This document shows, piece after piece, positions 1-27,692 of a stretch of 64,000 bases of DNA (positions are counted from its first letter, which is position 1; each line of letters begins with the position of its first letter). The position numbers and the translations under genes are program-made. The notes below the pieces were generated by a model that saw nothing but the letters and a program-made list of their open reading frames with translations, was not told the DNA's origin and did no database searches. The DNA comes from Octopus sinensis (Eukaryota): NCBI RefSeq assembly GCF_006345805.1, contig NC_042997.1, positions 79,546,001-79,610,000 on the forward strand. Direction: 5' to 3'.

Positions 1-307
1 TATCCTCAGGAAGTACTTCTGCAAATACTTGTTATCAAATGTCTATCTGTAAATGGTTTATCTTCAAGAAGTAAACTATGCAGAGAATCTGAAATTCTGC
101 GTCAAGTATAATGGTTGCTGAGTATATCAAAAACTGGAATTCATGGTGTTATCTTTAATTCTGTAATTGCAATTATTTCAATAGAACGTGAGAAATCCAT
201 TTTATGAGCATAAATATCCCCGTTAATATCAATATAATAAATTCATAATCTTTATATATATATATAAAACTGAGAATGTGTGTCTGTCTGTCTGCCTGTC
301 TGTGTGT

Positions 308-592
308 TTCCCTAAAACTTGAGAACTACACAACTAATTTCATTCAAATTTTACAGATGCCTTACTTATGGTCCGGGGAGTGTCATCGGCAAAAAAATTA
401 ACTTTTTGCCTAGGGCGAGCCCACAGCAATATCATATCTTCTCCACTACGATTCCCTAAACTCGAGAACTACACAACCAATTTCATTCAAATTTTACACA
501 TGCCTTACTTAGGGTCCATGTAATTTCATGGGCAAAAAATGTTCAACTTCTTGCCTAGAGAGAGCCCATTGCAATATCATATCTTCTCCACT
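308..592 (+). repeat. Two tandem ~144-bp units
   Basis: TTCCCTAAA...ATCATATCTTCTCCACTA occurs at 308-449 and 452-592. Confidence 0.85.
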
Positions 593-882
593 ATTTCAGT
601 ATTACGTGTTAAAAGTGAAACAAAAACATTTCTCTATTTTATGTCAGATACTTTCACTTTAACAATAAAAATAATAACAATTGAATTATATGTAGTAAGT
701 AATAATTAAAATCAAACTAAAGTATAATAAACTCGTAACATAAAAAAAGTAAAAATAGCAATTGGCATAAAATTGCATCAATGACTTGAACTTGAATAAG
801 TGGTTTCACATGAATGGGAATAAATCAAAAATAAAATTAGCGTGCAGAAATGGAATAGTCCAGATGGATAATAAAAAATTAA

Positions 883-938
883 ATTAAAGAAAAGACTATT
901 GTCTATAAAGTATACAATGTCGAGAAAAAAGGTCGCGT
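883..938 (+). pseudogene. 5' half-fragment of a fourth Tx1-like ORF1 (element D-left)
   Basis: Translates IKEKTIVYKVYNVEKKGRV. This matches RTIKYKVF (A), KTITYRTQ...LVRV (B) and KGIIYKTY (C), and stops where D-right (NMEESTFEKCLG) begins. Confidence 0.55.
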
Positions 939-2604
939 TTTTTTGCGCTCTGTAAAATTCGGTTAAAAAAGAAAAACAACAAAAAGTGAATTGTGGTTGC
1001 GGAATTGGAACGTCGGTTGGTGCGGTTTTGCGTCGCACTGGTTCTGTGCGTCGCACGTTTTCTGTTCGGGAGGCCGTTTTTCGGTCTGAGGCGACTATGA
1101 GCCGCCTCTACCAAACGGATGAGATGGAAGGGAGAAATTTCTCTGAAAATTCGTCGACATCTGAGGAGGAGTTGGCGGTGAAAAAAATGGAAAGCACCTA
1201 TGCAGGTATAACGAAGAAGTCAACAGAAAAAGAGATAGACCTGGCTAAGTTGACGGACTTCCAGGAGTTCATGAAGGAGGAGGAGAACGGAGAGGTTGAG
1301 CTGTTGCCTCTAGCAGGGCGCGGAGACTGGTTCCATCGTAGAACCATTAAATATAAAGTATTTATGAATGGAGGTAGAAAAATGGAAGTGATTAACATGG
1401 AAGCAATTGAAGAGGCTTTCAAACGGACAGGAGAAGAAATTGTGTACATGACAAAAGGATTAGAATATGGAACCATAACGGTACAATTTAAAAGTGAGAA
1501 AGCAGCCAGGAATATAGCAGCCAAGGTGGTGAGTACAGAAAAGTTTTACTTGTTCCCCTCGTATTTGAATAGAAGGACCACCTGAATTAGGGTGGAAGGA
1601 ATACCTCCACACCTAGAGGGCGAATTAATAACGGCTGCGGTTATCAAAGGAAATGAAGATAAAGTGGACATCCTCCACGCCATTATGAAATATGAAGGCG
1701 TGAGAGGTGCCACACTAGTAATGAACATACAGACGGAGGCGGAAGTTATAGAAAAGCTTACGGACAGTATAAAAACTGGAAATATTATTATGAGAGTGTG
1801 GGTGGAGGGTAGGGCGCCCAGGTGCTACAAGTGTGGCATGAGGGGTCACATAAGAGCCTACTGCCCTCCACCACTAAAGGAAAAAGAAAAGGAAATCGTC
1901 GCGGAAGCCCCAAAAGAGGAAGAAACCAAAGAGAACCAAAGGGAAAAAGAAACGACAGAAGAAGAGGAGATGCAACAAGAGTGGGAAGAAAGAAGAAAAA
2001 AGAGAAAAAGAAAGAAAAAGAAAAACTGTGCGAAGCCCCAACCCACCCCAACACCACCCGCACCCTCTGAATCCCACCCTTCCCCTGCAGACAGTGAACC
2101 CACCCGCTCCCCTCCAACAAGAAAACAAAAAAGAAAAATAACAATACAGACAGACAAGAGTTTGAAAACGAACCCAGGCCGAACATTTATATTGTGACTG
2201 AACAGAAAGAGGTTGAAAGGGTAATGGAGGAGTATGAATGGTATGAAATGGATGGGACCAGATATGCAGTGCTGGAAAAGAAGAATATAGATGAGTTTGT
2301 GTTGAGGTGTGAAAGGGAGAATTGGGAGGTGAAAGATACAAGAATGAGCGATGAATTCGTGGAATATATGGAGGACAGTTTCGGAGTAAGAATGGATATG
2401 GATGGTCTTCGTATTGGGAATGAACATTCAGGTGACAGTGAAAACAAAAGGACAGGTAAGTGATGCTGGCGGAGGGGGCCGTTAGCATCGCTTTCATATT
2501 ATCATTTTTTCATTTTCATTTGCTCATAAATTTAATCATATTGTTCTATGTCCCCCATGTTTTGTTATGTCCGCCATTCTTCGTAGCCCCTGGTGGGTAA
2601 TAAA
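938..2604 (+). mobile_element. Element A: ORF1-only Tx1/L1-like non-autonomous retroelement
   Basis: 5' TTTTTTGCG resembles the 5' end of element C. It has a gag-like ORF1 and no ORF2. Its 3' tail GCCC-CTGGT-GGGT-AATAAA is shared with B and C. Confidence 0.75.
1097..2463 (+). pseudogene. ORF1 of element A (RRM-like region + CCHC knuckle + basic linker + C-terminal domain), one in-frame TGA and one frameshift
   Basis: ATG at 1097. TGA at 1583-1585 is followed by an in-frame continuation (1592-2197) containing VEGRAPRCYKCGMRGHIRAYC. The C-terminal domain is in the -1 frame, open from 2098 to 2463. Confidence 0.8.
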
Positions 2605-2622
2605 GAAATAACATGGCGGAAA

Positions 2623-4538
2623 TCTACCCACGTGTGTTGTGAGTTATTTTGTATGTGAAAATTGGAAAAAAAAAACTGTAAAAAATTGTCAAAAAATTGA
2701 ATCACGCGAGGCGTTTGCCGCTGCGTGTTTGAACCTTTTATAGAAGGTGTGTCGACCCTCAAGTCATGGAGACTTACGCGGGGTTCGCCACAACAAAAAG
2801 TGACGAGTCTCTTAGAATAAAAGAAGTGTTCTTTAGAAAAGAACAATTGAAGGAATACGAGAAGTTCGTCAAAAGGGAGGGTGACAGCGTGAAGCTGGTC
2901 CCGCCTGTGGAAACAATAGAAGAGAGAAATAACAAGACGATAACGTATAGAACGCAAGATAGAAACACGAGAAAACTGGTGAGAGTGACGATTGAAGAAA
3001 TAGAGAAATGTCTGGGGGACATCATGAAAAAAGCGACTTTTGTAGACAGAGGAAAGAAATATGGTACGGTGGAGGTGAGATGCGCAACAAAGGAAGTGGC
3101 GGCCTCATTGGCTTCCACTGTCCTGAAAGCGGAAAATTTCACCATGTGGCCGACGTATAAAGGAAGACGAGGGGTACGGGTAAGAGTCCCAAAGGTGCCC
3201 CCAGATATTAAAACAGAAATGCTGGTAACAGCCATTATTGGGGCAGCAAAAGAGGAAGTAGAAATAGGGTCAATTAAGGAGACGAACGTTGTAAATTGGA
3301 AGGGATTCGGAGTAGAGTTGTGGCTGATGGCCACAATGGAAGGCATCGAAAGATTTCCCTTCCAAATAGAAATAGAAAACGAGAAAACAATTAGTGTAAT
3401 AGTGGAAGGCAGAAAACCGAATTGCTACCTGTGCGGATCAAGAGGGCACATAAAAAAGGAATGTCCGCTGTATGAATTCACAGCGGAGCAAAAAGAGACA
3501 CAAAGTGGAGAGAAGGAAAACGAACACGAAGGAAAGAACAGCGAAAACAAGGAAAAGGAAATAACGGAGAAACAACAAGAGAAGGGAAGTAACAGCGCAC
3601 TGAAGGAAAATGAAAACAAAGGGAAGAAGATAGTAGAAAAGGAGCAAAATTCACAGGGTGCAGAAGTAGTGGAGAAGGAGCCAAGGCAGAAGCAAGAGAA
3701 AGAAAAGGAAAGTACATTAAGGAAAGAGAAAAAGCAGGAAAAGAACAAGAGAAGGAACAGAACCAAGAGAAAGGAAAAGATGGTATGCAAAAAGGAAAAG
3801 AAACAACAGGAAAGGAACTTAAGGCACAGGGTAGAGAGACGGCAGACAAAGAGCCAAAAAGACAAGAGAAGGAAAAAGAAAGAAGAGAAAGCAAAAAGAG
3901 AGAAAGAGAGAAACCGAGGGAGGAGAAAAAAGAGGAAGTAAGTCCTAAGAGAAAAACTAGAGAAAACGTAGGTACGAATAGAAAATTCAAATACTATGGA
4001 ACGTTGATCCATCACAGGCACTGTGAGGAGATGGAAGATTTAATAAACGTAACAAACGGATATACGTGGGTCAGGATGGGCACCGAATGGAAAGAAACAG
4101 GTGTACTCGTCCACGAGAACGACGCCGAGGCGTTCATCGAGGCAGCTGGCAAGAACGTGTCAAAACATATGAAATGCCGACTTACAAGGTGGCCTCGAAC
4201 GATGGAAGTTTACTCAGATTTGGTAGACATAATGGAGTATATATAAAAGAAAAGGTATTGTGAAAACTTTAATTTGGAAATGATAAAAAGAACTTAAATT
4301 CTGAAAAAAAAAACAGAAATGTTGAACTTTGTAAAACTTTTGAAATGTATGTTGAAAATGTATAAAATGTTTTATTTGGAAAATATTGTTGACGAATAAA
4401 AAACAAATGACGAAATGTAACCGCTCGATTTCGGGGATCGAGTGGGCATTACACCACATTGTACAAACTTCATAATTCATTATTAATTTTCCCGATTGTA
4501 TTGTCCCATCTATGTAGCCCCTAGTGGGTAATAATAAA
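2623..4538 (+). mobile_element. Element B: ORF1-only Tx1/L1-like non-autonomous retroelement
   Basis: It has ORF1 only. The 3' end GATTGTATTGTCCCATCTATG..GCCC-CTAGT-GGGT-AATAATAAA is nearly identical to that of element C. Confidence 0.8.
2766..4246 (+). CDS. ORF1 of element B (gag-like, CCHC), C-terminal domain in -1 frame
   Basis: The 391-aa ORF contains YGTVEVR, PTYKGRR and VEGRKPNCYLCGSRGHIKKEC. Overlapping ORF 3785-4246 supplies a globular-looking C-terminus. Confidence 0.8.
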
Positions 4539-4769
4539 ACAACATGGAGGAAATCAATTTTTTGCGTTTATTAGTAAGTTGATATATTTTTGCTCTCGTA
4601 CTATTATCACTGTTATTATATACTGTTGGTCTACCTGTTTTGTCTATTGTTGTCTAACTGACGAAGTCAGCCTTCGCGCGAAGACTTCGCGTTGGTGTTC
4701 CCCCCTCCGTGGGGGAAAACTACAATTAATTTGGATTTACCAAAGGCTTGTTAAAGCCATTTGTTCAAG

Positions 4770-6147
4770 ATGGAGTCCCCCATCTCTTATTCGCCCGTGA
4801 CGAGCGAGGATGAATACCCGGCGTTGTCGCCAAGAAAAAAAGAGGCGTTGTCGCCAAGAAAAAAAGAGGCGTTGTCGCCGAAGAAAAAAGAGGCGGCGTC
4901 GCCCAAGAAAATGGAAAAACCAGGACCAGCATCAACTCCAGCAAAAAAATTCGCTGAAGTGGCTGGGAAAAAGATTAAAAATATAAATATAGAAAATTTT
5001 GAAAAATTTGCAGACTGTGTAAAAAAAGAAGGCACAGAAGTGACTGTAGCCACAAACATACAAAAACATGACGATATAGAAAAAAAAGGAATAATATATA
5101 AAACTTACGACACAACGACAAAAATGATCCAAAAAATCGAAGAAAAAAAAATAGAGTTTTGTCTAAAACCTTTTATGGATAAAATAACGTATATAAACAG
5201 AGGAAAAAGATACGGCACAGTGGAGGTGCGTTTTACTACGGAGGAGATAGCGAAAAAACTATCGATGGAGCCAATCAAAGCAGAAAACATTGTCTTGCTA
5301 CCATTGTATAAAGGAAAAAGGACGTCGAAAATTTCAATGAACAACATACCGCCAGAGGCAGATGCAGAATGTCTGGTGGCAGCAGTGATGGTAGGCCTGG
5401 AGGAAAAAATAAACATCCTCCAGGCCACAGTGGAGGAAGAGGAGTTTTGGAAAGGGCAGAAAATAGTGATAGCCATTCAGGCGGAGGTGCAAACACTGGA
5501 AGAAATTCCAGAAACGGTAAAGATTAGTGAAGACGAGAAAATAACAGTGTTCGTGGAGGGCAGGAAGCCGAGGTGCTTCGGCTGCGGCAAGAAGGGTCAT
5601 GTAAGGGCGGAATGCCAACCCCAACCCAAACCGCAGGAAGCACCTAAGCCAAGAGAAAAAGAAGATAATGTGTCACCAGAAGCAGCGTCGGACGGCCCAG
5701 AAGGGAAGACTGAAGGTGTGGAGGTGACGGTGACAGCAGAACCAGCGGCGGAGGAAAAAAAACAGAGGAAAAGATAAATGAGGAGGGGTGGGCAAAAATT
5801 ACCGGAAAAAAAAAAGAAAAACGGAAACCACCCCTCCCAGAGTAATTTTAAAAAAGAAAAGAGAGTCAATGAACTCGTATATGGCCGTAAAGGCAGCAAA
5901 TAGCAGACTCGGAAATGTGTTGGCAGCCATGGCCAAAGTGGAGAAAGTAGTGAAAAAAAACGACTTTGTAATTTACAGAATAGGCCGGAAGGATTACGGG
6001 CGGATAAAGCCAGAATTCTTCCATGACGTAGGCCCACTTAGATTGGATGTGACATCTCCACATATATTCGAGGGCCTAAGTCAGACTCCCCCACGAGGCC
6101 CAGAAAAAGAGTTAGAAGAACAAGAGAAAACCGAACCACTGATATAA
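4770..6147 (+). CDS. ORF1 of element C (gag-like, CCHC), interrupted at two A-homopolymers
   Basis: ATG at 4770; motif VEGRKPRCFGCGKKGHVRAEC. Adding one A to each of the runs at 5755-5762 and 5806-5815 joins 4770-5777, the linker TEEKINEEGWAKITGKKK and 5788-6147 into one ORF. Confidence 0.8.
4821..4910 (+). repeat. 24-bp in-frame tandem repeat (ALSPRKKE x3-4)
   Basis: GCGTTGTCGCCAAGAAAAAAAGAG units start at 4821, 4845 and 4869, with a variant at 4893. Confidence 0.9.
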
Positions 6148-6156
6148 AGGTAAGTA

Positions 6157-9100
6157 ATGGATTACATTTATGTTGGTTGTTTGAATGTGCGCGGCCTGGG
6201 AGCAGGCTGGAAGCAAGGTCGCTTCCTGCATGATATCAGGTCGCGTAATTTAGATGTTATTGTTGCTACAGAAACCCGGTTAGAGGGGCCAAGAGGTCTA
6301 CTCCCGCTGTTTGACGGCTACGAGGGTTTTTTCTCTCCTGGCAGTCCTACAGGCGGGAGTGGGGTGTTGGTCCTATTAAAAAGAAACCGGGTTTCTGAGA
6401 AAAAGTTAATTTTTGCAGATCCAGAAGGTAGGCTGGTCGTCATGGATTTGACGTTCAGTAATGGTAAAGTTATCAGACTGGTTGCAATTTACGCACCCAA
6501 CCATACAGGGCAAAGTGATTATTTTCGTGAACTAGAAAACTTTCTTGGTACTTCGCATTCATTAGTGGTGCTAGGAGACTTTAACACAATTTGCAAAGCG
6601 GATGTAGATTGTGTTGGCTCGCGTCCAGATAGAAAAGGCAACAGTGGCTTCATGGAACTGCTAAGCCGCTTTGAGCTAGCAGATCCTTATAGGCTGGAAT
6701 TTCCGAACGCTCCATTGTGGACATGGTCAAACAGCGACGGATCTTCCAGGTCATATTTAGATAGAATACTAATTAGAAAAGTAGACAGTAAAATAGCTAA
6801 GTGTCCACAGTTTTACCCGATCAGCTACAGTGATCATAAAATGGTCACTTGTAAGCTTGACATAGATAAGGTTAAAAATAGAGGATCCGGTTACTGGAAA
6901 CTTAATACGTCCCTTTTGGCGATTAAGGAGTACAAAGACCGGATTAGGAATATAATTCAGAGGGCACTATCTGGTACCATCATCAATAACAAATGGTGGT
7001 ACGCCCTGAAACGAGCCATCAAGTTTGAATCTATTAGATATAGCATAGGAGTAGTGGCTAGAGAGGCTAGAAGGGAAACTACTCTAGTTAAGGAATTAGA
7101 GGAAGCCATAAAAACTGGCTCTGCGGCTCAGGTGGCGTCCAAGAGACTGGTGTTAAACCAGCACCTCGAGGCCAAACACATGGGCTGCATTGTCAGGGCT
7201 AGAATCCGCCATATGGGATGTGAAGGAATCAACGCCGTGAGATGGGCCCGAGTGGTGGAAGCTCAGCATGGTAACGATGCCACGATTCGATCTTTGACGA
7301 ACCAACAAGGTGAGTTGATAAACGAACCCGAGGAGATGTGTGAGGCCTTTCAGGAGCACTTCGCTCAGCTTTTCGGTGAGTGCGGCGGACTGGATAGGAG
7401 GAGGGCCTTTACGGACCTACTCGACGGGCTGCCGCGCTTATCGGGGCGAGATGCGGAGGGCTGTGAAGGGCCAATCACGCCTGAGTTGGTGGTTGAAGCA
7501 ATGGCGGACTGCGGCGCGGGCAAGGCGCCGGGTTTGGATGGTCTACCCTATGAGTTATATAAGAGTATGCCAGACTTGTTCGGGCACCTACTGGCGGAGG
7601 TCTATGCAAACTGGCAGCAGAACGGGCTTATACCCAGATCTGTGCGCCGGGGAGTAGTGACTCTCGTCAGAAAGGACCCGAGCAAGGGGGAGTGCATTGA
7701 TAATTTCAGGCCCATCACTCTGCTAAACACAGAGTTGAAGATTTTGGCCAAAGTGTTATCGAAAAGATTGGCGCGTGTCGCGGATGGTCTGATCGGAGAG
7801 GCACAGACATGTGCCGTTCCGGGCAGATCCATTCAGGATAATCTCCATCTAATGCGGTACACTATAGAGGGGTTTAATAGTGATTCTGGCAAGGGTGGGG
7901 CACTGGTCCATTTAGACCAATCTAAAGCTTTTGATAGGGTCGACCATCGTTACCTGGTATCTGCCCTGGCACAGTTCGGGCTGAGCCTTGGCTTCCTCAG
8001 GTGGATTATCCAAATTTACGATAACATCGACTCGGTAGTTCGGGTGAACGGCTTCTTGTCGAAGCCGTTCAAAATCAAACGCTCGGTTCGTCAAGGGTGT
8101 CCGCTCTCCCCGCTTTTGTACGTGATGGCTCTTGAGCCATTACTGCGAAAACTGAGCGGCATCCCGAGACAGCCAGGTAATGGAAAATCAGTGTCAGCGT
8201 ACGCGGATGACATCACCATCATCGTAACCGAAATGGACCACCTATGTAAAGTAGGCAAAGCCATAGAGGTTTACGAGACGGTGACAGGAGCAAAAGTTAA
8301 TCGCGAAAAGTCAGTCGGCTTGCAACTCGGCACCTGGAGAGGCAAGTCGATGCCTCCTGACAGCGTCGTGGGACGTTGGACGGAGGGTCCGATTAAACTG
8401 CTAGGGGTCTGGTTCGGTCCAGACCTCCAAATAGAGAAGAATTGGGGCGAGGTAACGAGCAAGGTGGCTGCAGTAGCCAAGACCTGGTCTTGGCGGTGGC
8501 TATCCCTGAAAGGGAGGGCGGAGGTGGCCAATGTGTTTATCGCATCGGTTATCACCTACCGCCTTTCCGTCGTTCCTTGCCCTGATTCGTGGTTGATCAA
8601 GTTGGAAAGACAGCTCTTCTACTTCTTGTGGAAGGGCGGGAAACCACTTGTGAAACGCTCTACTTGCTGTCAACAACCGTTAAAGGGTGGGCTAGGGATG
8701 CCTTGGCTGATGATGCGCAGACATGCGCTGAGGTTAAGACATCTGTGGCTCTACCTGGATGGTGAACGGGTGTGGTCTTCGCTAGCAAAACTGATGTTTC
8801 CCAAGTTCACTAGTTTCGGTGGATGGGAAACCTGGCTGAATCGTAGATCGAAACTTGGTACTTGGTACACGGAGTGTCGCAAGGCTCTCCTGCTATTCCG
8901 TCGCTCGGGCAACGCCTGCGGTGGGGGTTCCACCACATTCTTCTATAGAGGGTTGGTAGAGGCGGAATGTGAAGATACCTTGGGGGAAACCCTAGGTCTC
9001 GACGATAATCAGCTGGCCAGTCTGTTCCGACGTACGTTCAAGCCGAGGACACTGGACAACTTCCAGAAGTCTCTGGCATGGCAATGCTACAGAGGAGCTC

Positions 9101-9552
9101 TACCTGTTCGGGATAAACTCGCAAGGCACGGTGGCCAAGACAGTCCGATATGTCCAAGATGCGGGCGGGATAGGGAAACCGTCCCGCACGCTATTGTTCA
9201 TTGTCCGGACGTGTCTGAGGTGTGGGTTTATGCCGAACAGCTGTTGTCAGGTACACGAAGAGTACAGCTGTCGACTGAGTCGATTACAAAAATTGACCCA
9301 CCGGATTTCCTCGTGAATGAAGGTAAGTTTCGTTTTCTCGTTGTAGTAGCAATTGCGAAAGAGGTGATATGGAAGACGAGAATGAAAGGTTTACAGTCAG
9401 GCAAGTTCATCTCCGGCCCTGGTTTGATGAATTATTTCATCTTTCACCTGAAAAGGAAGATAGGGCTGGAGAGAATATGCCTGACTAGGAGAGTGTATGA
9501 AGAACGATGGAAGGATGTAGCACGAAAGTTGCGAGTGAAAGATACAACATAA
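6157..9552 (+). CDS. ORF2p: AP-endonuclease + reverse transcriptase + C-terminal zinc finger (Tx1-like), intact, 1131 aa
   Basis: APE motifs LNVRGL, ATETRL, GDFN, YLDRILI, SDHKMV; linker YWKLNTSLL. RT motifs APGLDG, FRPITLLN, LDQSKAFDRVDH, RQGCPLSPLLY, YADDI, KLLGV. Zinc finger CPRC...HAIVHC. Confidence 0.97.
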   Translation: MDYIYVGCLNVRGLGAGWKQGRFLHDIRSRNLDVIVATETRLEGPRGLLPLFDGYEGFFSPGSPTGGSGVLVLLKRNRVSEKKLIFADPEGRLVVMDLTFSNGKVIRLVAIYAPNHTGQSDYFRELENFLGTSHSLVVLGDFNTICKADVDCVGSRPDRKGNSGFMELLSRFELADPYRLEFPNAPLWTWSNSDGSSRSYLDRILIRKVDSKIAKCPQFYPISYSDHKMVTCKLDIDKVKNRGSGYWKLNTSLLAIKEYKDRIRNIIQRALSGTIINNKWWYALKRAIKFESIRYSIGVVAREARRETTLVKELEEAIKTGSAAQVASKRLVLNQHLEAKHMGCIVRARIRHMGCEGINAVRWARVVEAQHGNDATIRSLTNQQGELINEPEEMCEAFQEHFAQLFGECGGLDRRRAFTDLLDGLPRLSGRDAEGCEGPITPELVVEAMADCGAGKAPGLDGLPYELYKSMPDLFGHLLAEVYANWQQNGLIPRSVRRGVVTLVRKDPSKGECIDNFRPITLLNTELKILAKVLSKRLARVADGLIGEAQTCAVPGRSIQDNLHLMRYTIEGFNSDSGKGGALVHLDQSKAFDRVDHRYLVSALAQFGLSLGFLRWIIQIYDNIDSVVRVNGFLSKPFKIKRSVRQGCPLSPLLYVMALEPLLRKLSGIPRQPGNGKSVSAYADDITIIVTEMDHLCKVGKAIEVYETVTGAKVNREKSVGLQLGTWRGKSMPPDSVVGRWTEGPIKLLGVWFGPDLQIEKNWGEVTSKVAAVAKTWSWRWLSLKGRAEVANVFIASVITYRLSVVPCPDSWLIKLERQLFYFLWKGGKPLVKRSTCCQQPLKGGLGMPWLMMRRHALRLRHLWLYLDGERVWSSLAKLMFPKFTSFGGWETWLNRRSKLGTWYTECRKALLLFRRSGNACGGGSTTFFYRGLVEAECEDTLGETLGLDDNQLASLFRRTFKPRTLDNFQKSLAWQCYRGALPVRDKLARHGGQDSPICPRCGRDRETVPHAIVHCPDVSEVWVYAEQLLSGTRRVQLSTESITKIDPPDFLVNEGKFRFLVVVAIAKEVIWKTRMKGLQSGKFISGPGLMNYFIFHLKRKIGLERICLTRRVYEERWKDVARKLRVKDTT

Positions 9553-9796
9553 ATGTAATACCAAGCGCAACCAAAAGTATCAGTGGGGAGGCGGGGCTCG
9601 TGGGGTCCGAGCTAAACCCGCACCCACTCCACCCGTAATGTCTTCCGGTCTGTCCCATCATTCGATTTCTGTCCATTTATTGTAATTCATGAAAATTTTT
9701 AAATTCGATTTATTGTAAAAACCCATTCGTGTGTCTGACCCCATCATCAGATTGTATTGTCCCATCTATGTTCGCCCCTTATGGGTAATAATAAAA

Positions 9797-10110
9797 CAAC
9801 ATGGAGGAAAGCACCTTCGAAAAGTGTCTTGGTGCGACTATGAAAGTTATCTAATCAGAGGCGGTAAACTCGCCACAATAGAAGCAAGGTTCGAGTCAAC
9901 GGAGCGTGCAAAGGAGTACTCGACTCGAACTTGCAAAGTGGAAATATTCTATTTTTACCTTTATATCTGGGACGTAGGACGTCCCGGAAAAAATTTAAAA
10001 TGCCCCCCCCCCCCCGAAGTAGAGGTAGGTTGGATTGTAGCCACACTTCTATACAAGAGGGAGGACAAGATACAATTGATCGAAATTACAAGAGACGGGC
10101 TAACAATTCC
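9797..10110 (+). pseudogene. 3' part of the fourth Tx1-like ORF1 (element D-right), frameshifted and truncated before the CCHC
   Basis: Read across frames: NMEESTFEKCLGATMK / SYLIRGGKLATIEARFESTERAKEYS / QSGNILFLPLYLGRRTS / PPEVEVGWIVATLL. This is collinear with ORF1 of B and C. Confidence 0.8.
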
Positions 10111-10561
10111 AGTCTGTTATATATTTTGAGTATTGTTATCACTAGCGATATCAAGATATAACTTTGTATTTTGTATTTTATGTGTAGATGTATATACATA
10201 GATGTACATGTAATATGTACACATATATATACACATATATACATGCACTAGCACTATGACCCGGCAACGACGGGTCTTTAATGCTAGTATTATAATAACT
10301 ATACATACATGGGTACTTACAACATGGATACTTACAAAATGTGTGTGAGCGTATATATGTATGTATGTATAATATTTTAAGGCTCCATTACTCAAATTCC
10401 ATTCACAAAGCTTCAAAACTGTATTTATAGAAAATTAAATTGCATAAATATTACAAGCCGACCGTATTCTCATTCCCTATCAATAACCTACACTTGCATA
10501 TGCGGGAGTGGATCAGTTAGTGCATTTATGCATAATTTTTTCCGTTATTCCATTTTTAATA

Positions 10562-13250: not shown

Positions 13251-15029
13251 TTATGAAGGTAAATATTTTAGTAAAAAATAGGTTAATCTGAAATCATTCG
13301 GAGGGAAGGAGCCGATTTAGCTTTTCTACACAATTACGTGGTATTTAAATCAAATTATGAAACATTGTGTTACTATTTTAATATGGCGGAATTTTTCGAC
13401 ACAGTTATTATTAAATTTTGGATTTGTGGAAATGTACAATCCAAAGTCTATTCTTTTGCAGGAAAAAATTGTAATAACCAGCAAATAATAATCTTAATGC
13501 TCGAATATGAAATAAACAAAATTCACTTGCGCCCTCTCGTTTTGAACTTTTAACGACCCCCCCCCCATCCCACTGATTTGAAAAGCTTGTAAACAAATTC
13601 GGAATAATGTAAATTTCATGCAAAACGTTTTAGGTATAGAATTCGCTTCACTAACGTGCACGGCAATTTCAATTATAAAACTTGCGATAAAAATAAAGGA
13701 GATTTGAGCTACGGCCGTAAATATTTGTTAGATACAGTGAGAATCTGTTTTCGCGCATATTCTAATGAATTATATGACAGGAATCATAATCTGTATCAGT
13801 GGCGACTCCGACACTCGGAGTATAAATTTAGTAAAGTGAACATGCATTTGCAAGTTGATTTAATTTCTGCAAGCAGTGACTTCAAACATGTAATTGCAGC
13901 CAATAACTCAGGCTCCTTTTATTGAGCCTTGGTCGCAGTTCATTTATTTTCGTTCAGCGTCATTCATAGCAGACGTTCTCGCGACATCGTTCACACACAC
14001 CTCACTCGGACTCAGAAGTTACAGCCTGAGTTGTTATCTGTAATTGTAAAAATCAAAAGTAATCCAAATTCAATGTTTTATTAAAGCCATAAATTTCTCT
14101 AGAGATTAGGATTTAAATTCCAATCTATGAAAGGTTTCCATCCTACAATATTTTTAAGGGAACGAAAAATTATCCAGCAACTCGGGCTTATACGAACGAG
14201 CCTGGTAGGTGTAAAAGACTAACTGGCATCTCTTGTCAAGAGTACGGGCGACAGTCAGATCACCGGTGTTTGTTGTGCACTCCGCTGTAGTTATTTCATT
14301 GCTGTTGTTCTGTGCGTCTGTGTAAAGATCAGTTGTGTTTTGCAGGGTTGCTTTATTTTCCCCTTAGCTTAGAAATGGAGAAAGACATATTAAAACTATA
14401 TTTCTGTTTCATTGTTAAATTATCAGTGCACATATAAGTCTGCGGTGCGCATTATCACTCTTACCTTCTTTTATATATGTGTCTTATGCGAAATCTGTGG
14501 TGAGCTCGAGTGACGCTGATGACCTGGAGTCGCCTCTGATATATATGTGTACATATATGAATATATATCATGTATATACATACATATGTATGTATACACA
14601 CACACATACACATTAAAGGAAAACAAAACTATGGAAGGACGAGCATCTCAGGTCAGTGAATTCTTTTATATACTGTAAATTCCCTGTCTGGAACTTTCTT
14701 GCATATACACCTTGTCTCTGATGACGGAATACCCAGTGTATGGATATATTGATCCATCATCTGTGATATCCCAGAAACAGCTGTGAAGCATTAATTGTTT
14801 TTACTTCTCCATTTTTGATTCACCTTACTCTAATTAAATATTCTGAATGACCTGAGATACTCATCCTGCCTTGGTTTTGTTTTCCATTTCTTCTAAAATA
14901 TACCAGCTGACTTGGAAGCCTACAACGGATCCCTAGCTCCAGCCTCAGCTGTGAGCTTGGAACCTAAATGATGACCAGTTGTGGCATTTACGCAGTGTAC
15001 CTATTGGTTCAGATCATCAGTGATATATA

Positions 15030-16334: not shown

Positions 16335-18930
16335 TCTTTCATGAGAAGACATACTCCTTCTGGAGTAAAAATCTGGAGTGAAGAGAAGGAGTTTAACCAA
16401 GATGCTCTGTAGCTGGAAGAAATCCGAAGAAGTTATTCCTCCTTCGTTACATCCAAGTCATACAACATTGATGTGAAATTCTTGCAACTGTGATCCAGAA
16501 ACTCCAGAATGGAAAAGAACCTGGAAGAGACTTGATTATTGGATATTCTACCGACCATATCTTATCAATCTGTACCAGCAAGCTCTCATTGGGAACAGTA
16601 GCATACCACACTGGTTAGCTCTGGCAGAGACAAAATTGATCCCCAAATGCCAAACCACCGACATGGCAAAAAACTACCGGCCAGCTGTATGCCAGAACTT
16701 AATGTATAAGATATATACAGCATCTTTAAACCTCTTCCTCCAGGACCAGGAACAAGCAGCTGGGAAGAAGGGAGTCTGGGAATATGCCGAGCAATTGTTA
16801 ATCAACAAAATTGTGACGTCAGAGTTGCGAGAGCATAGGAGAAACCTAGTTTCAATGTGGCTAGACAACAAGAAAGCTTTTGACTCTGTTCCCCACTAAT
16901 GGATGCCAGAAGCCCTTCAACTTGATAAAGTTCCAGTGAGAATAGTCAAAGCCATAGCTGACCTGATTTCATCGTCGGCTACCATCTTGAAATTAAACAC
17001 AAAGAGTGACTGTATTATAACCGATAGAATACAGTATCGCAAAGGCATACTCCACGGAGACAGCCTCTTTGTGATGTTTATACGTTCTGTAAACCCCTTG
17101 TCATTCATGTTAAGGAAGTCTGAAAAATATCTCACTGGTTCACAAGGAAACAGAAATACCAAAATTACACAGTTTCTTTGTGGATGACTTGAAACTTATG
17201 CAAAGAATATGCATGAGATGAAAAAGAGTTTTGGCCTAGTTACAACATTCTCAAAAGATGTAGGGTTGGGGCTTGGTCAGGATAAATGTTATCATATGGT
17301 TGTGAAAAGGGGGGGGACTATAAACCAGACTGGTAACATCTCCATCAATGATTTGACTGTTTCCCCTGTGTCTGACGAGGACTGTTACAGGTATCTAGAG
17401 GTGGATGAAAATATCTTACAATGGCACCGGTAACAAAACACGTGTCACTAAAGAATATTACAGCCGAACACAGAAAATTTGTATCTCAGAACTGTTTGCA
17501 TTCAATAAAACAGTAGCCAACCATGTTTTTGCAGTGCCAGCATTTGGGCTGCTTGATTGGACTCTTGATGTGATCCGAGCCATTGATATGAAAACCCGAA
17601 AAATACTAATAAGCACACATAATTTCCACATGAACAGTGACGTAGACCGCCCTTACCTAAAACGAAAACAAGGCAGCAGAGGCTTAACATCGATCCAATA
17701 TGCCTTTGAATGTTATATCAAATCCCTTCGGCAAGATTTTTTAACCACCAAGTGTCGAAGTGCATCCCTTGACCAAGTTTGCATACATGAGGCTGATAAC
17801 ATCAAAAGACTTGGAAGGCTGCTCCTTGAGCAACATTCTTTGTCTAATAACCTAGAAAACGTGCCCAAAGAAGTCGTATGACTCTACCGCAACATCAGAT
17901 GATAGGATGAGCCTATATGCGCAGAAGACTATGCATAGTTATGTTAGTTGAAAGCTCCGAGATGATAGTAACATCGATCATGAAAGCAGTTTACCATGGA
18001 CCAATAACCGGATTACTACCTCCCACTTTGAAGGGTATGCGTTTGTAATCCAGGATCAGGAAATATCCACCAAGTACCTGATGCATAAAAGAAATAGTAA
18101 TGCAGGAAAGCAGTAAAATTTGACAACCGATGCAGACTTTGTGGAGTTAACACCGAAGATATCACCCATATTATAAGCAGCTGACAGAAAATATCATCAC
18201 GGTATTATCTACCGATGAGTCATGACGTTGTAGCTAGGACACTCTATAATGAAGGATAACCCGGAAGATAAAGAAATAAGAGCCCACAGTATGGTAGAAG
18301 CCATAGCCATTCATAATAAAAAGGAGTACATCCGACTTGATAAAATGATTTGGAACAGAAAAGAGAAACTGTGCACTGTTGTGGAAATTAGCTGTCCAGC
18401 GGATGTTAACATAAAGCTGTGAGAAATCCGCAGTTACTCCATCCAGATTACAAGTTCAAGTTTATATCTGTATTGTGGGGGCTCTGGGATATGCAACACA
18501 CTGCCTAAATACCAATCTTGAGAAATCAAGCTTCTCAAAACCAGAAAGGAGAAAGCTAATTCGAAGACTACAAATCCAGTTCATCACTGAAACTGTAATA
18601 ATCAGTAAAACTTTCCAGAAGTTTATAATTTAATTATGAGCATGTTTACATATGCAACTATATGCATGAGAATACATACATAAAGCAAAGTATACAAATC
18701 TGTTCATATACATACATACATACATACATACATACATACATACATACATACATACATACATACATACATACATACATACATACATACATACATACAAAAA
18801 TACCCCGTTGTTGATGCTGAAATTCCAATGAAGGAGCCTTGAATCTAGGTTAGAAACCGGCTCGTTCTCTATTCGCAAGAAATCTTGAATTAAAACTGAA
18901 CAATGACATACACATTGACACATATGTTAG
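16335..18930 (+). mobile_element. 5'-truncated degenerate R4/Dong-like LINE (RT + CCHC + restriction-like endonuclease)
   Basis: Motifs YRPAVC, WLDNKKAFDSVPH, RKGILHGDSL and SDVDRPYLKRKQGSRGL. At ~18130: CRLCGVNTEDITHIISS. At ~18360: WNRKEKLCTVVEISCP. (CATA)n on both sides. Confidence 0.85.
18708..18795. repeat. (CATA)n microsatellite (representative of many)
   Basis: Read directly. Other tracts: (CA)n ~16228-16297, (GATA)n ~19574-19646, (TATC)n ~33268-33362 and ~36560-36672, (TAA)n ~34105-34195, (CTTT)n ~39701-39765, (TTA)n ~42468-42552. Confidence 0.95.
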
Positions 18931-19647: not shown

Positions 19648-20820
19648 GAAAAATTGAAAATGGAGACAAACACTCAAGATGTTATTAAATCATTTATGTC
19701 TATATATCATCGACATATGTTTTCGATGGATGCATTCAAAAAACATCTGACAGGATAAATAATGTTGAGCAATGCATCAATCTTATTAGGGAAGATATAA
19801 ACAACAGTGTTCATCAATAGACATTTTAACATATAAAAAACTCCGACATATGTGATGCCTATATATATATATAGAGGGAGTGTTTGTCCAGGATAGGACT
19901 ACACAGCCACAGCAGGAAATGTATCAGGACATGAAATGTAAAAGCCGGACTGGACTATTTTATGCGCAACTCCATTGTCTCCCGAGACAAAAAGGATGCC
20001 AACCAATATATATATATATATATATATATACCTATATATATATATACACGTGTTCAGTCACACACTCCTACATACATAAGCATACATACACATACCAACG
20101 CACAAGTACATACACACATCCATAAACATGTATATACATACTCATGCATACATACATACACATACTCACACATACATAAGCACATTCATACATACATAAA
20201 TGTACATGCATATACATTCAGGAACACCTACAAACATACACGTATATACATATATGGAAAGCGAAGTTGTGAAGGGAACGCTAAAAATTGGAAAATGTCG
20301 TTGAGGAAACAGACACCATAGGGCGAGAGAAGAAGAAAAGGATCAGAGGAAGAAAGAGGGAGTGAAAGAACAAAATTAAAGAAGAAAGGGAGGAACGAGC
20401 AAGAAGAGAATAGAAGACAGATAGAAAATAAAAGATGAAGGGAAGAATATGGGTTATGGGAAGTAAGAATAAAGAATAACGATAAGTTGCAGAAATTGTT
20501 ATTAGGTGAGGGGTAGATATTATTTGAAAAAGAAAGCGGAAGAGTGTTTTCTCCAATATAAACACCTGTAAGCTCGTTCATTAAATGTGTTTACCAGTTT
20601 ATGTTTAGAAAAGAAGATAGATAGTTGCTCGTCTGTACAAAGAGGACAAAAGGATTTCCTTTTATCATAGGGGAATGATCTGGATAAAATTTTCCAATCT
20701 AAAGAAAAAGTTTGTTGGAGTCTTTAAGGTGCCAAATTATGTATGTATGTATGTATGTATGTATGTATGTATGTATGTATGTATGTATGTATGTATGTAT
20801 GTGTATACATATATATGTGT

Positions 20821-23953: not shown

Positions 23954-25227
23954 TCAGGTCATCCTATAAGTTCTGTCCGAATTTTGAATAAAGAAAACAA
24001 GTGATCAAATGTTATATTTAATTGAAATTTAATCATCAATATATTTTTGCTGATTATCTATGACTTGTTTCCATCTATTTACAAGCCTTTTAATCCCATC
24101 AATGTAAAACTCTTTTGGTTTTAAAGAGAACAACTCTGAAATGTCAGTTTCGACCTCCTCCTGGCTTGCGAAAGTTATGTCCCCCAAATGATTCTGTAAA
24201 CTACGAAACAAATGGTATTCTGAAGGAGCAAGTTCGGGAGAATAAGGTAGCTGAAGAATTTTTTCCCACCCAAGCTCTTCGATTTTCTGTGGTGTTATTT
24301 TTGCAGTGTGGAGTCGCGCATTGTCCTGATGAAACATCATTCCTTTTCGATTCATTAAAGTGGGTCTTTTTTCTTCAAAGCTTGATTCAAACGCTCTAAT
24401 TGCTGACAGTAGACTTGAGCATTAATTGTTGCTTTAGGTGGTAACAATTCAAAGTGAACTACTCCTTTACAATCCCCCCAGATTGAAAGAAGAACCTTTT
24501 TCCTATGAAGTTCCCTTCTCGGTTGTGGTTGAGCCTTTTCCCTTTTACCAAGCCACTGTTTACGACGTTTAACATTTCGATAGCAGATCCATTTTTCGCC
24601 ACCAGTCTATCAAAAATGGGTGAAATGAGTTCGTGAGAATGGAGGGAAGAGCAGATATCAACTCGGGATTTGCGGTTGCTTTCGAACAATTCATGAGGCA
24701 CCCATTTTCCAAGTGTAGGAACCTTTCCAGGTTGTTGAAGATGACGATGAACAGTCGTATGGCTTGAACTAAGCTTTATTTCCAATTCTTCAACTGAAAA
24801 CGCAGAATTTTCTACAAGTAATGCCTCATGGAGCTTATCATCAAACTCAACTGGACGTCCTGTTTGATCTTCAATTTCAAGGCTGAAATCTCCACTTCTG
24901 AATTTTGCAAACCATCTTCTGCAAGTTCTTTCATTCCAGCATTCTTTCCCATAAACTGAGTGTATGTTTCGAATCGTTTCGGCTGCAGAGTTTCCTTTTT
25001 CGTACTCATAAATCATTATGTGCCTCAAATGCTCTTTGGATACTTCCATGTTAGAAAGGGTTTTAATCAAAGAAACTTTAACTGTATTATTCTGTAAAAT
25101 AATATTTAATTAGTTTAAATGTACACAAATGCATTAAAATAATTTTAATTCCATTAGATATTCTAAAATACTATTAAATTTCCTTCAATTTAAAAAAAGG
25201 TAAAATCGAACAAAACTTATGGGATGA

Positions 25228-25282: not shown

Positions 25283-25670
25283 TTACTCTTTTACTTGTTT
25301 CAGTCATTTGACTGTGGCCATGCTGGAGCACCGCCTTTAGTCGAGCAAATCGATCCCGGGACTTATTCTTTGTAAGCCTAGTACTTATTCTATCGGTCTC
25401 TATTGCCGAACCGCTAAGTTACGGGGACGTAAACACACCAGCATCGGTTGTCAAGCGATGTTGAGGGGGACAAACACAGACACGCAAACATACGCACACA
25501 CACACATATATATATACGACGGGCTTCTTTCAGTTTCCGTCTACCAAATCCACTCACAAGGCATTGGCCGGCCCGGGGCTATAGCAGAAGACACTTACCC
25601 AAGATGCCACGCAGTGGGACTGAACCGGAACCATGTGGTGGTTAACAAGCTACTTACCACACAGCCACTC
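25283..25670 (-). mobile_element. SINE family 1, near full-length copy
   Basis: The minus strand reads GAGTGGCTGTGTGGTAAGTAGC...GGTTCAGTCCCACTGCGTGGCA...GGCCACAGTCAAATGACTGAAACAAGTAAAAGAG. Confidence 0.85.
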
Positions 25671-25679
25671 TGTTGACCA

Positions 25680-25718
25680 TATTATATATATAGATATATA
25701 TATATATAATATATATAT

Positions 25719-25773
<55 letters not shown>

Positions 25774-25810
25774 TATATATATGTATATATATATATATAT
25801 AATAATATAG

Positions 25811-25900
<90 letters not shown>

Positions 25901-25944
25901 TATGTATATATATATGTATATATGTATATATATATATTATATGT

Positions 25945-26026
<82 letters not shown>

Positions 26027-26035
26027 GTATATATG

Positions 26036-26084
<49 letters not shown>

Positions 26085-26155
26085 ATGTATATATGTATAT
26101 ATATATATATGTACATATATATATGTATATATATATATATGTATATATATATGTC

Positions 26156-26192
<37 letters not shown>

Positions 26193-26897
26193 GTATATAT
26201 TATATATATATGTATATTATATATATGTATAATATATATGTATATCTATATATATATATATGTATATATATATATGTATATATATATGTATATATATATA
26301 TATATATATATGTATATGTATATATATATGTATATATATATGTATATATTATATATATATATTGTATATGTTATATATATATATGTATATATATATGTAT
26401 ATATATATATATTATATATATGTATATATATATGTATATATATTATATATATGTATATATATATATGTATATATATTGTATATATATATATGTATATATA
26501 TATATGTATATATATATATGTATATATATATATTGATATATATATATGTATATATATATATGTATATATATAATGTATATATATATATATATATGTATAT
26601 AATATATAGATATAATATAATACATATATATATGTATATAATAGTATGTATATATATAATGTATGTATATATATATATATGGTATATAGATATATATGTA
26701 TATATATATGTATATATATATTATATATATATGTATATATATATATGTATATTATATATATATATGTATATATATGTATATATATTATAATATATATGTA
26801 TATATATATATATGTATATATATATGTATATATATATAATATATGTATATATATATATATGTATAGTATATATATATTGATATATATATATAGTATG

Positions 26898-26930
<33 letters not shown>

Positions 26931-26945
26931 GTATATATATATATG

Positions 26946-27006
<61 letters not shown>

Positions 27007-27028
27007 GTATATAGATATATATATGTTG

Positions 27029-27066
<38 letters not shown>

Positions 27067-27470
27067 TGTTATATATATATATGTATATATATATGTGTAT
27101 ATATATATATATATGTATTATATATATATGTATATATATATATGATATATATTGTCTATATATATATATATATACGTATATAATATATAGATGTTATATA
27201 TATATATATGTATATATATAATATATGTATATATATATATATATATGTATATATATGATATATAGTATAATATGTATTATATGTATATATATGTATATAT
27301 ATATATATATGTATATATATGTATATATATCTGTATATATATGTATATATATATGTTATATATGTATATATATGTATATATATTATATATATATTATGTA
27401 TAGATATATGTATATATATTGTATCTGTATATATATATGTAATATATATGTATATGTATATATATATGTG

Positions 27471-27502
<32 letters not shown>

Positions 27503-27657
27503 GTATGTATATATATATATATGTGTAGATATATATATATTATTATGTATCTATATATATATATATGTAATATATATATATTATATTATGTATATATATA
27601 TTATATATATGTATATATATATATATGTATATACTATATATCGATATGTATATATAT

Positions 27658-27690
<33 letters not shown>
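25680..27690. repeat. ~2-kb (TA)n/TATATG-variant microsatellite
   Basis: Almost exclusively alternating T/A with interspersed G or extra T. Confidence 0.97.

Positions 27691-27692
<2 letters not shown>

What the first reader, a model, noticed from the sequence alone, without database searches (positions are those of the whole stretch)
883..10110. Self-nesting Tx1-like retrotransposon system: four divergent ORF1 lineages and one RT stacked head-to-tail at one site
Seen: three CCHC gag-like ORF1s in the same orientation (A 1097-2463, B 2766-4246, C 4770-6147), but only C is followed by ORF2. Each unit ends in the same 3' tail, then the 15-mer ATAACATGGCGGAAA (2608-2622) or ACAACATGGAGGAAA (4539-4553, 9796-9810). 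The ORF1s align only at motifs (TIxY, YGTxxV, PxYxGRR, PP, VEGRxPxCxxCGxxGHxxxxC), so they are old paralogous lineages rather than recent duplicates. Known: Tx1-group elements are often sequence-specific and pile up at multicopy targets. Inference: a consortium of autonomous and ORF1-only partners repeatedly hits one target. Alternatively A+B+C moves as one polycistronic multi-ORF1 retrotransposon. I do not know either arrangement as described for this target.
Basis: partly seen in the sequence, partly recalled or inferred. Interest (0 to 1): 0.9.

Follow-up and report, generated by a model that had tools for sequence, protein, structure and literature searches.

The report
Octopus LINE pile-up at one site
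Three different members of an octopus L1/Tx1-like jumping-gene family, two carrying only the first gene and one complete, inserted one after another into the same 13-base spot; this is a new example of a known way that such elements form head-to-tail arrays, not a new kind of element.

Summary
Window 928-10110 carries, head to tail on the + strand, two ORF1-only elements (A, B), one ORF1+ORF2 element (C) and a short fragment of a fourth ORF1 lineage (D).

All lineages, and a dispersed SINE, end at ...GGGTAATAA(AGAAAT/TAAAAC). The next 13 bases (AACATGGMGGAAA) occur only in this array. They have the length of this family's target-site duplications (11-16 bp). I read them as the target copied again at each of three or four insertions at one nick site.

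Other Octopus loci show the same habit with other junction oligos:
- O. sinensis has a mixed array of five units. Three of them have their own duplications within about 25 nt of a resident element's 5' end.
- O. vulgaris has arrays of at least 3 and at least 5 units, 99-99.8% identical, on two chromosomes.

An A-type element occurs without B and has a perfect 16-bp duplication, so A+B+C is not one polycistronic unit.

The ORF2 module is 94-100% identical between units whose 5'UTR-ORF1 modules are only 33-85% identical. The switch lies at a conserved TAA-GGTAAGT-N-ATG junction.

Verdict: a new variant of a known kind (sequential same-site insertion, known in Tx1 and R1, with gag-only partners). 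Interest is moderate.

The parts
914..927 (+). Possible decayed left copy (T0) of the 13-base target, just upstream of A's 5' end
   Evidence: ACAATGTCGAGAAA aligns with T1 with one mismatch and two one-base gaps. The score is reached by 2% of random 25-mers from the window, and by 5% with a T2-based query. This is weak evidence.
928..2609 (+). Element A, an ORF1-only (ORF2-deleted) non-autonomous LINE. 5'UTR about 928-1096. ORF1 1097-2463, dead copy with TGA at 1583-1585 and a frameshift near 2190. Inter-ORF remnant GGTAAGTGATG at 2455-2465. 3'UTR and tail to 2609.
   Evidence: The 5' end and 3'UTR are homologous to the A-type copy in L005, which is bounded by a duplication. No ORF2 remnant by tblastn. 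Junction remnant.
2610..2622 (+). T1, a copy of the target 13-mer (AACATGGCGGAAA)
2623..4540 (+). Element B, an ORF1-only LINE of a second lineage. 5'UTR 2623-2765. ORF1 2766-4246 with a frameshift in the K/E linker. 3'UTR and tail 4247-4540. It is flanked by the 13-mer plus TC on both sides.
   Evidence: (zf-CCHC 2e-5)
4541..4553 (+). T2, a copy of the target 13-mer (AACATGGAGGAAA)
4554..9797 (+). Element C, an ORF1+ORF2 LINE. 5'UTR 4554-4769 with two palindromes. ORF1 4770-6147, broken by two frameshifts at about 5775-5815. Junction TAA-A-GGTAAGT-A-ATG (one extra A before GGTAAGT in this copy) at 6145-6159. Intact ORF2 6157-9552 (APE, RT with YADD, zf-RVT). 3'UTR and tail 9553-9797.
9798..9810 (+). 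T3, a copy of the target 13-mer (AACATGGAGGAAA)
9811..10110 (+). D, a fragment of a fourth ORF1 lineage truncated at both ends. It is the oldest resident or the original flank.
   Evidence: E = 5e-4 and 1e-3; 8e-9 to P0052. No further D sequence or tail anywhere in the window.
38533..38800 (-). Dispersed tRNA-type SINE copy whose last ~45 nt match the LINE tail. It is outside the array but belongs to the same mobilisation system.
   Evidence: A sister copy in L006 has a 14-16 nt duplication.

Best explanation
The array records serial, independent target-primed reverse transcription events by different lineages of one Octopus L1-superfamily (Tx1-like) LINE family. All events used the same nick site.

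How the 13-mer spreads: each insertion duplicates the 13-15 bp between the bottom-strand and top-strand nicks. A copy of the target AACATGGAGGAAA therefore ends up on both sides of the newcomer, and the site stays available for the next hit. The resulting layout is (T0?)-A-T-B-T-C-T-D.

Likely order (weak evidence): C landed at the 5' edge of the old fragment D. B then landed at the left copy of T, because its duplication seems to include C's first two bases, TC. A came last, because T0 and T1 share a C at the position where T2 and T3 have an A.

Nature of A and B: they are ORF2-deleted derivatives. They keep the 5'UTR, ORF1, the inter-ORF junction (a decayed version of it in B) and the family's 3' tail. 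I infer that they are copied in trans by a C-type ORF2 protein that recognises this tail, as the dispersed SINE with the same tail would be.

Why the same spot is reused is inferred, not shown. Insertions of this family land within about 25 nt of the 5' boundary of a resident copy, in the same orientation. One possible cause is that the original endonuclease site survives next to the element. Another is that the AT-rich tail end together with the GU-rich 5' end makes a preferred site. In O. vulgaris the homogeneous arrays may then have been expanded by unequal exchange.
For: 1. The conserved tail ends at ...GGGTAATAA(AGAAAT/TAAAAC) in every lineage and in four dispersed SINE copies whose flanks are unrelated. 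The 13-mer follows it only in this window.

2. The 13-mer has the length of proven duplications in the family:
- L005 A-type: 16/16, GGATGTGATATAATGA at 2479-2494 and 4186-4201.
- L005 C': 13/13, GAATACTCGTCAT at 14633-14645 and 19903-19915.
- L005 E: ATAGACAACTG at 2460-2470 versus ATAGACACTG at 9333-9342.
- L006 SINE: 14-16 nt.

3. B is flanked by AACATGGMGGAAATC and C by AACATGGAGGAAA.

4. The units are heterologous. Their ORF1s are 30-37% identical, so tandem duplication cannot have made the array.

5. Other loci show the same head-to-tail habit with mixed or uniform units.

6. All three L005 duplications lie about 0-25 nt from a resident 5' end.

7. The A-type in L005 has an intact ORF1 of at least 455 aa. 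dN/dS between the two A-type copies is about 0.14.

8. The inter-ORF junction is retained in A.

9. C's ORF2 is intact, with APE, RT and zinc-binding domains.

10. Precedents exist for tandems that sandwich a duplication: R1 and P-element (PMC5932611) and SINEU-3, whose target preference is shared with crocodilian Tx1 families (PMC4494074).
Against: - No clean copy of the 13-mer lies left of A. There is only a decayed match at p of about 0.02-0.05.
- D lacks its own 3' part, so the founding event cannot be reconstructed.
- The junction oligos of different arrays share no evident consensus, so the reason for reuse is unexplained.
- In the uniform O. vulgaris arrays no duplication is visible between units. 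In L007 only the leftmost unit is 5'-truncated. That pattern would also fit concatemeric cDNA or unequal exchange.
- Only four extra loci were available, and all were found through annotated ORF1 proteins.
- Trans-mobilisation of A and B by C-type ORF2 protein is untested.
Confidence: 0.7

Rival explanations
1. A single insertion of a concatemeric cDNA. The reverse transcriptase jumped from the 5' end of one RNA to the 3' end of the next (C, then B, then A), or it copied a read-through multi-unit transcript.
For: - In L007 the array has identical junctions at three joints and only the leftmost unit is 5'-truncated.
- Uniform arrays show no visible duplication between units.
- The TARA relative L002 has 55-nt identical contig ends, as a tandem or circular unit would.
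Against: - The same 13-mer, which no other copy of these elements carries, sits at all three heterologous joints in the window. Template jumps do not copy target DNA.
- Internal units of the L005 array have their own perfect duplications.
Confidence: 0.1
2. Strict sequence-specific targeting. The endonuclease recognises ACAACATGGAGGAAA or a host multicopy sequence that contains it, as Tx1, Keno and R1 recognise their targets.
For: - The site was hit three or four times.
- The literature reports target preference for many Tx1-clade elements (PMC4494074).
Against: - The oligo is absent from every junction in L004, L005, L006 and L007.
- Other duplications in the family are unrelated in sequence.
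- SINE copies with the same tail are dispersed.
- Rfam finds no RNA gene in 700-10400.
- The flanks of the arrays are unrelated, except L004 versus L006.
Confidence: 0.07
3. A+B+C is one composite, polycistronic retrotransposon that moves as a unit.
For: The three parts share orientation and abut tightly.
Against: - An A-type copy in L005 has its own 16-bp duplication and neighbours E, not B.
- C-type units occur alone in arrays.
- Each unit has its own 5'UTR and its own complete tail with AATAAA.
- Target copies lie between the units.
Confidence: 0.03
4. Tandem duplication or unequal crossing-over of one founder, or an assembly chimera.
For: The uniform O. vulgaris arrays, with units 99.7% identical within an array, may well have grown this way.
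Against: - The window units are different lineages, so they are not duplicates of each other.
- A collapse or chimera would not place the same 13-mer precisely after three complete tails.
Confidence: 0.05

Closest known systems
Sequential ('double') insertions that sandwich a target-site duplication: R1 tandems with a 33-nt rDNA duplication, P-element and hobo dimers (McGurk & Barbash 2018, PMC5932611), and tandem SINEU-3, a SINE that shares its Mariner-N4_AMi target preference with crocodilian Tx1 families (Kojima 2015, PMC4494074)
   Same: The units are head to tail in one orientation. A copy of the target, of duplication length, lies between them. The arrays can later expand.
   Different: Here the units are three or four deeply diverged lineages, not two copies of one family. 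No fixed target sequence or host repeat was found. The common factor is closeness to a resident copy's 5' end.
Drosophila telomeric HeT-A / TART / TAHRE arrays
   Same: Mixed head-to-tail arrays hold gag-only elements (with an intact gag in at least one copy) alongside RT-encoding relatives.
   Different: - The octopus arrays are internal to chromosomes: 31.9 of 40.2 Mb, 71 of 109.7 Mb and 10.4 of 21.2 Mb.
- The autonomous element has an endonuclease, and the insertions have duplications.
- The ORF2 is L1-like, not Jockey-like.
HAL1 ('half-L1') elements of mammals (recalled from memory: Bao & Jurka 2010)
   Same: Both are L1-derived elements that keep ORF1 and the 3' end but lack ORF2.
   Different: The octopus A-type keeps the ORF2 start codon and the inter-ORF junction. 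Amplification was seen in only two copies here.
LINE-SINE pairs with a shared, specifically recognised 3' tail (Ohshima & Okada; octopus tRNA-derived SINEs)
   Same: A ~45-nt tail with a small GCCC-N5-GGGU hairpin is shared between the LINE lineages and a dispersed SINE. The copies end at a fixed base without poly(A).
   Different: Which named octopus SINE this is was not established. Mobilisation is inferred only.
Mosaic evolution of mammalian L1, with replacement of 5'UTR/ORF1 modules (recalled from memory)
   Same: A conserved ORF2 is combined with unrelated 5' modules.
   Different: - The break here is sharp and lies exactly at a conserved inter-ORF junction.
- Several ORF1 modules coexist.
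- Some ORF1 modules also live as free ORF1-only elements.

Membership tests
L1 superfamily / Tx1 clade of non-LTR retrotransposons | N-terminal APE-type endonuclease in ORF2 | tested here: met
   Pfam Exo_endo_phos 1.9e-13 at residues 23-227. L1 endonuclease structures match residues 3-232. The ETR, GDFN and SDH motifs can be read in the translation.
L1 superfamily / Tx1 clade of non-LTR retrotransposons | Reverse transcriptase closest to L1-type RTs, plus a C-terminal Cys/His motif | tested here: met
   RVT_1 2.5e-31 and zf-RVT 1.5e-8. Human L1 ORF2p scores 2.5e-64 over residues 3-867, against R2 at 1e-25. The YADD box is present.
L1 superfamily / Tx1 clade of non-LTR retrotransposons | ORF1 with RRM fold(s) and a CCHC knuckle | tested here: met
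   AlphaFold model with pLDDT 80.6 shows two RRM-like folds. The top Foldseek matches are tandem-RRM proteins, 3.5e-5. zf-CCHC scores 2e-5 in B.
L1 superfamily / Tx1 clade of non-LTR retrotransposons | RT phylogeny places the element inside the Tx1 clade rather than L1 proper | not testable with these tools
   No Repbase or Dfam reference RT set was on hand. The only 'TX1' label among the hits is an automatic name on a fungal protein at 26% identity.
L1 superfamily / Tx1 clade of non-LTR retrotransposons | Preference for a defined target sequence | tested here: inconclusive
   One site was reused three or four times and insertions cluster at resident 5' ends. No shared target sequence was found among the arrays.
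Telomeric HeT-A/TART-type consortium | Mixed head-to-tail arrays that include a gag-only partner with coding capacity | tested here: met
Telomeric HeT-A/TART-type consortium | Arrays at chromosome ends, extended by end addition without endonuclease or duplication | tested here: not met
   The arrays are internal to chromosome-scale records. An APE domain is present. Duplications are present.
Sequential-insertion tandems that sandwich a target-site duplication | The junction holds one copy of the target, with the length of the family's normal duplication, and the units share orientation | tested here: met
   13-15 nt at three junctions, against 11-16 nt at four independently bounded insertions.
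Sequential-insertion tandems that sandwich a target-site duplication | The outermost flanks carry the same duplication | tested here: inconclusive
   The right flank has it (T3). The left flank has only a decayed match, p of about 0.02-0.05.
ORF1-only non-autonomous LINE derivatives (HAL1-like) | Keeps the 5'UTR, ORF1 and the partner's 3' end, lacks ORF2, and transposes on its own | tested here: met
   The A-type has two copies at unrelated loci. One has a perfect 16-bp duplication and an intact ORF1. B was seen once only.
LINE-SINE shared-tail partnership | Homologous 3' tail in a SINE and in the LINE | tested here: met
   A ~45-nt alignment across 8 LINE tails and 4 SINE tails. The hairpin is conserved but shows no covariation.

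The most novel reading that the evidence does not exclude
This LINE clade homes to the 5' boundary of resident copies and builds internal, HeT-A/TART-like mixed arrays. These arrays would then act as recombination nurseries in which free-living ORF1-only lineages and a single conserved ORF2 'engine' are re-joined at the conserved TAA-GGTAAGT-N-ATG junction. That would make it a modular two-gene retrotransposon system, not a set of ordinary families.
Probability: 0.25. Interest if true: 0.7.

Novelty: new variant of a known kind. Interest (0 to 1): 0.5.

Why it matters
Full-length L1-like LINEs have been hard to find in octopus assemblies. One study recovered only RTE and Dong elements (PMC9115989).

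This family looks young. Its units are 99-99.8% identical across two O. vulgaris chromosomes, and it shares its tail with an octopus SINE found in dispersed copies. It is therefore a candidate driver of the retroelement expansion in octopus genomes.

The mixed arrays and the sharp ORF1/ORF2 mosaic offer a natural system for three questions:
- how LINEs choose sites next to their own kin;
- how gag-only parasites persist;
- how LINE modules recombine.

The array mechanism itself has precedents, so the value lies in a new and tractable example rather than in a new principle.

Tried and rejected
- Exact look-up of the window's ORF2 in public assemblies: not on record.
- ORF2 homologue search: no Octopus ORF2 is annotated. 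The best hit is 58% identical on a 3-kb contig.
- TARA/JGI relatives L002 and L003 (39% identical): their 3' ends cannot be aligned to the octopus tail.
- L008 (30% identical): a single copy, uninformative.
- Rfam at gathering and at permissive thresholds: no ribozyme, snRNA, tRNA or other RNA gene at the junctions or 5' ends. The only hits are microsatellite look-alikes of miRNAs at 10.17-10.37 kb and a few scattered sub-threshold matches inside the elements.
- Decayed tail upstream of the window array and of the L005 array: none found.
- Shared left flanks among arrays: only L004 versus L006.
- Endonuclease site logo from SINE copies: only five SINE copies with this tail in the sequence held, and one with a clear duplication.
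- Tail hairpin: conserved, but no covariation.
- Homology of the ORF1 C-terminal domain across lineages: too weak to claim, 12-20% identity.
- Telomere reading: rejected from the record coordinates.
- Programmed frameshifting in ORF1: considered and rejected. The shifts go in different directions, sit in A-runs, and are absent from P0054, P0055 and the L005 A-type.
Full report
**What is there.**
The window looks like an Octopus-genus genome: about 35% GC, with TA/CA microsatellites, a mariner-like ORF and SINEs. Between about 928 and 10110 on the + strand lie four retroelement pieces, head to tail.
- A (928-2609), B (2623-4540) and C (4554-9797) each have a 5'UTR, a gag-like ORF1 and a 3'UTR that ends in a homologous tail.
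- Only C has an ORF2 (6157-9552, 1131 aa, uninterrupted).
- D (9811 to about 10110) is a short ORF1 fragment.
- The ORF1s are 30-37% identical to each other, and each has one CCHC knuckle.
- An AlphaFold model of the C core (pLDDT 80.6) shows two RRM-like folds ahead of the knuckle. Its best structural matches are tandem-RRM proteins.
- ORF2 has Exo_endo_phos, RVT_1 and zf-RVT domains. Its closest solved relative is human L1 ORF2p at 2.5e-64 over residues 3-867, far ahead of R2. It therefore belongs to the L1 superfamily. Whether it falls in the Tx1 clade could not be tested.
- None of the three ORF1s is intact. A has CGA to TGA at 1583 and a frameshift. B has one frameshift. C has two frameshifts in A-runs. 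This is judged against in-frame relatives.

**The 15-mer is flank, not tail.**
I aligned the 3' ends of all available lineages: window A, B and C; L005 A-type, E, C1 and C'; and O. vulgaris units from L004 and L007. Conservation stops at ...CCCCTNNTGGGTAATAA(AGAAAT/TAAAAC).
- The same ~45-nt tail ends a tRNA-type SINE at window 38533-38800 (-), at one place in L005 and at two in L006. Unrelated DNA follows at once.
- One SINE copy has a clean 14-16 nt target-site duplication.
- The 13 bases that follow the tail in the window (AACATGGCGGAAA, then AACATGGAGGAAA twice) occur at no junction in any other locus.

**Other loci.**
A profile of the three ORF1 cores found annotated Octopus proteins. Their genomic loci were fetched.
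- L005 (O. sinensis, CM016867.1, about 71 Mb of 109.7 Mb) holds five head-to-tail units: A-type (ORF1-only), E (divergent ORF1+ORF2), C1, C' and C3.
- L004 (O. vulgaris, OX597840.1) holds at least 3 units and L007 (OX597843.1) at least 5, with a period of about 5.28 kb. The units are 99.0-99.8% identical within and between the two chromosomes.
- L006 holds decayed copies.
- All of these arrays are internal to their chromosomes.
- In L005 three units have their own duplications. A-type: 16/16. C': 13/13. E: ATAGACAACTG versus ATAGACACTG. Each insertion lies about 0-25 nt from the 5' end of the unit downstream.
- The A-type copy has an uninterrupted ORF1 of at least 455 aa. dN/dS between the two A-type copies is about 0.14. 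The gag-only lineage is therefore a living family that transposes on its own.

**Interpretation of the window.**
The 13-mer has the length of the family's duplications. It flanks B (13 nt plus TC) and C (13 nt), and the units it separates are unrelated lineages.
- The simplest account is repeated insertion at one nick site, with the target re-duplicated each time.
- This pattern is documented for R1 and P-elements (PMC5932611) and for SINEU-3, whose target preference is shared with crocodilian Tx1 families (PMC4494074).
- The TC shared after T1 and T2 suggests that B came after C.
- A decayed match left of A (914-927) resembles T1 more than T2 and shares T1's private C (p about 0.02). This suggests that A came last. 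Both inferences are weak.
- The polycistronic reading is excluded by the solitary, duplication-bounded A-type copy and by arrays that hold only C-type units.
- Template jumping does not explain target copies at heterologous joints. It remains possible for the uniform O. vulgaris arrays: no duplication is visible between their units, and in L007 only the leftmost unit is 5'-truncated.

**Why the same place?**
This is not settled.
- The duplications of different arrays share no clear motif, and the SINE is dispersed. A strict sequence target is therefore unlikely.
- What recurs is position, at or just inside a resident 5' boundary and in the same orientation.
- Possible causes, all inferred:
  - the original nick site survives beside each newcomer;
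  - the AT-rich tail end next to a GU-rich 5' end makes a favoured endonuclease site;
  - the 5' ends of active copies are accessible.
- The tail carries AATAAA only 8-9 nt from the element's end. Cleavage and its downstream GU-rich element would therefore fall in whatever lies downstream, and a neighbour's 5' end would supply that element. This is an inference.

**Things found on the way.**
- *Mosaic structure.* Window C, L005 C1 and C', and the L004 units are 94-100% identical through ORF2 but only 33-85% identical through the 5'UTR and ORF1. The switch falls within about 20 nt of the inter-ORF junction. Synonymous difference between window C and the L004 unit is 0.09 in ORF2 and 0.74 in ORF1; ORF1 pS against L005 C1 is 0.67. 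One ORF2 backbone has therefore been joined to several old ORF1 modules.
- *Junction.* TAA-GGTAAGT-N-ATG is conserved in every C-type ORF1+ORF2 copy seen (divergent E has TAA-GGTAGGC-AAACT-ATG) and survives in the A-type, where ORF2 is deleted just after its ATG. GGTAAGT is the consensus 5' splice site. Its role is unknown.
- *More distant relative.* A TARA-ocean relative (39% ORF2 identity) sits on a contig whose ends overlap by 55 nt, as a tandem or circular unit would.
- *Shared upstream block.* The left flank of the L004 array and the left flank of the L006 copy share a ~130-nt block. This is unexplained.

**Verdict.**
This is a new and rather rich example of a known process, with gag-only partners and module shuffling as the most interesting parts. 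It is not a new kind of element and not a fixed-target system.

Noticed in passing
window 6141-6160; L004, L005, L007 units: The ORF2 module is 94-100% identical between units whose 5'UTR+ORF1 are only 33-85% identical. The break is sharp and lies at the inter-ORF junction. pS (window C vs L004 unit) is 0.09 in ORF2 against 0.74 in ORF1; ORF1 pS vs L005 C1 is 0.67. This indicates swapping of ORF1 modules.
   Followed up: partly
window 6145-6159 and 2455-2465; L004 6053, L005 4027/10980/16258, L007 5357: The inter-ORF junction TAA-GGTAAGT-N-ATG, a perfect 5' splice-site consensus, is conserved in every C-type ORF1+ORF2 copy seen (element E has a variant, GGTAGGC) and is kept in the ORF2-deleted A-type. 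Its function is unknown.
   Followed up: partly
window 38533-38800 (-); L005 ~380-650; L006 36105-36127 and 18498-18738: A tRNA-type octopus SINE shares the last ~45 nt of the LINE tail. It is dispersed and has a 14-16 nt duplication. This LINE family is a candidate partner for it.
   Followed up: partly
L004 4270-4400 and L006 8950-9100: A ~130-nt block just upstream of two different C-like copies on different chromosomes is homologous (score 82 against about 22 for shuffles). It is absent between array units. It could be a shared target or 5' transduction; this is unresolved.
   Followed up: partly
L002 1-55 and 6620-6674: A TARA metagenome contig carries a 39%-identical ORF1+ORF2 element, and its two ends are identical over 55 nt. 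This suggests a tandem or circular unit of 6619 bp in a distant relative.
   Followed up: no
window 4672-4720; L004 and L005 5'UTRs: Two near-perfect palindromes (GCCTTCGCGCGAAG-like and CCCCCC..GGGGG) are conserved in the C-type 5'UTRs of several lineages. They could be a promoter or an RNA structure.
   Followed up: no
window 259-832: An unrelated repeat lies left of the array. It contains an internal ~143-bp direct duplication (308-448 similar to 452-593) and is also present in L006 at 17336-16827 (reverse strand).
   Followed up: partly
window 24459-25070 (-): A mariner/HTH-type transposase remnant ORF of 203 aa.
   Followed up: no
window ~25600-28000: A very AT-rich stretch (11% GC in 26001-28000), apparently an imperfect TA/TATG-type microsatellite; the sequence itself was not inspected.
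   Followed up: no
window 17405-17881 (+): An ORF of 158 aa that looks like the C-terminal part of a reverse transcriptase from a different LINE family. This rests on reading the translation and was not tested.
   Followed up: no
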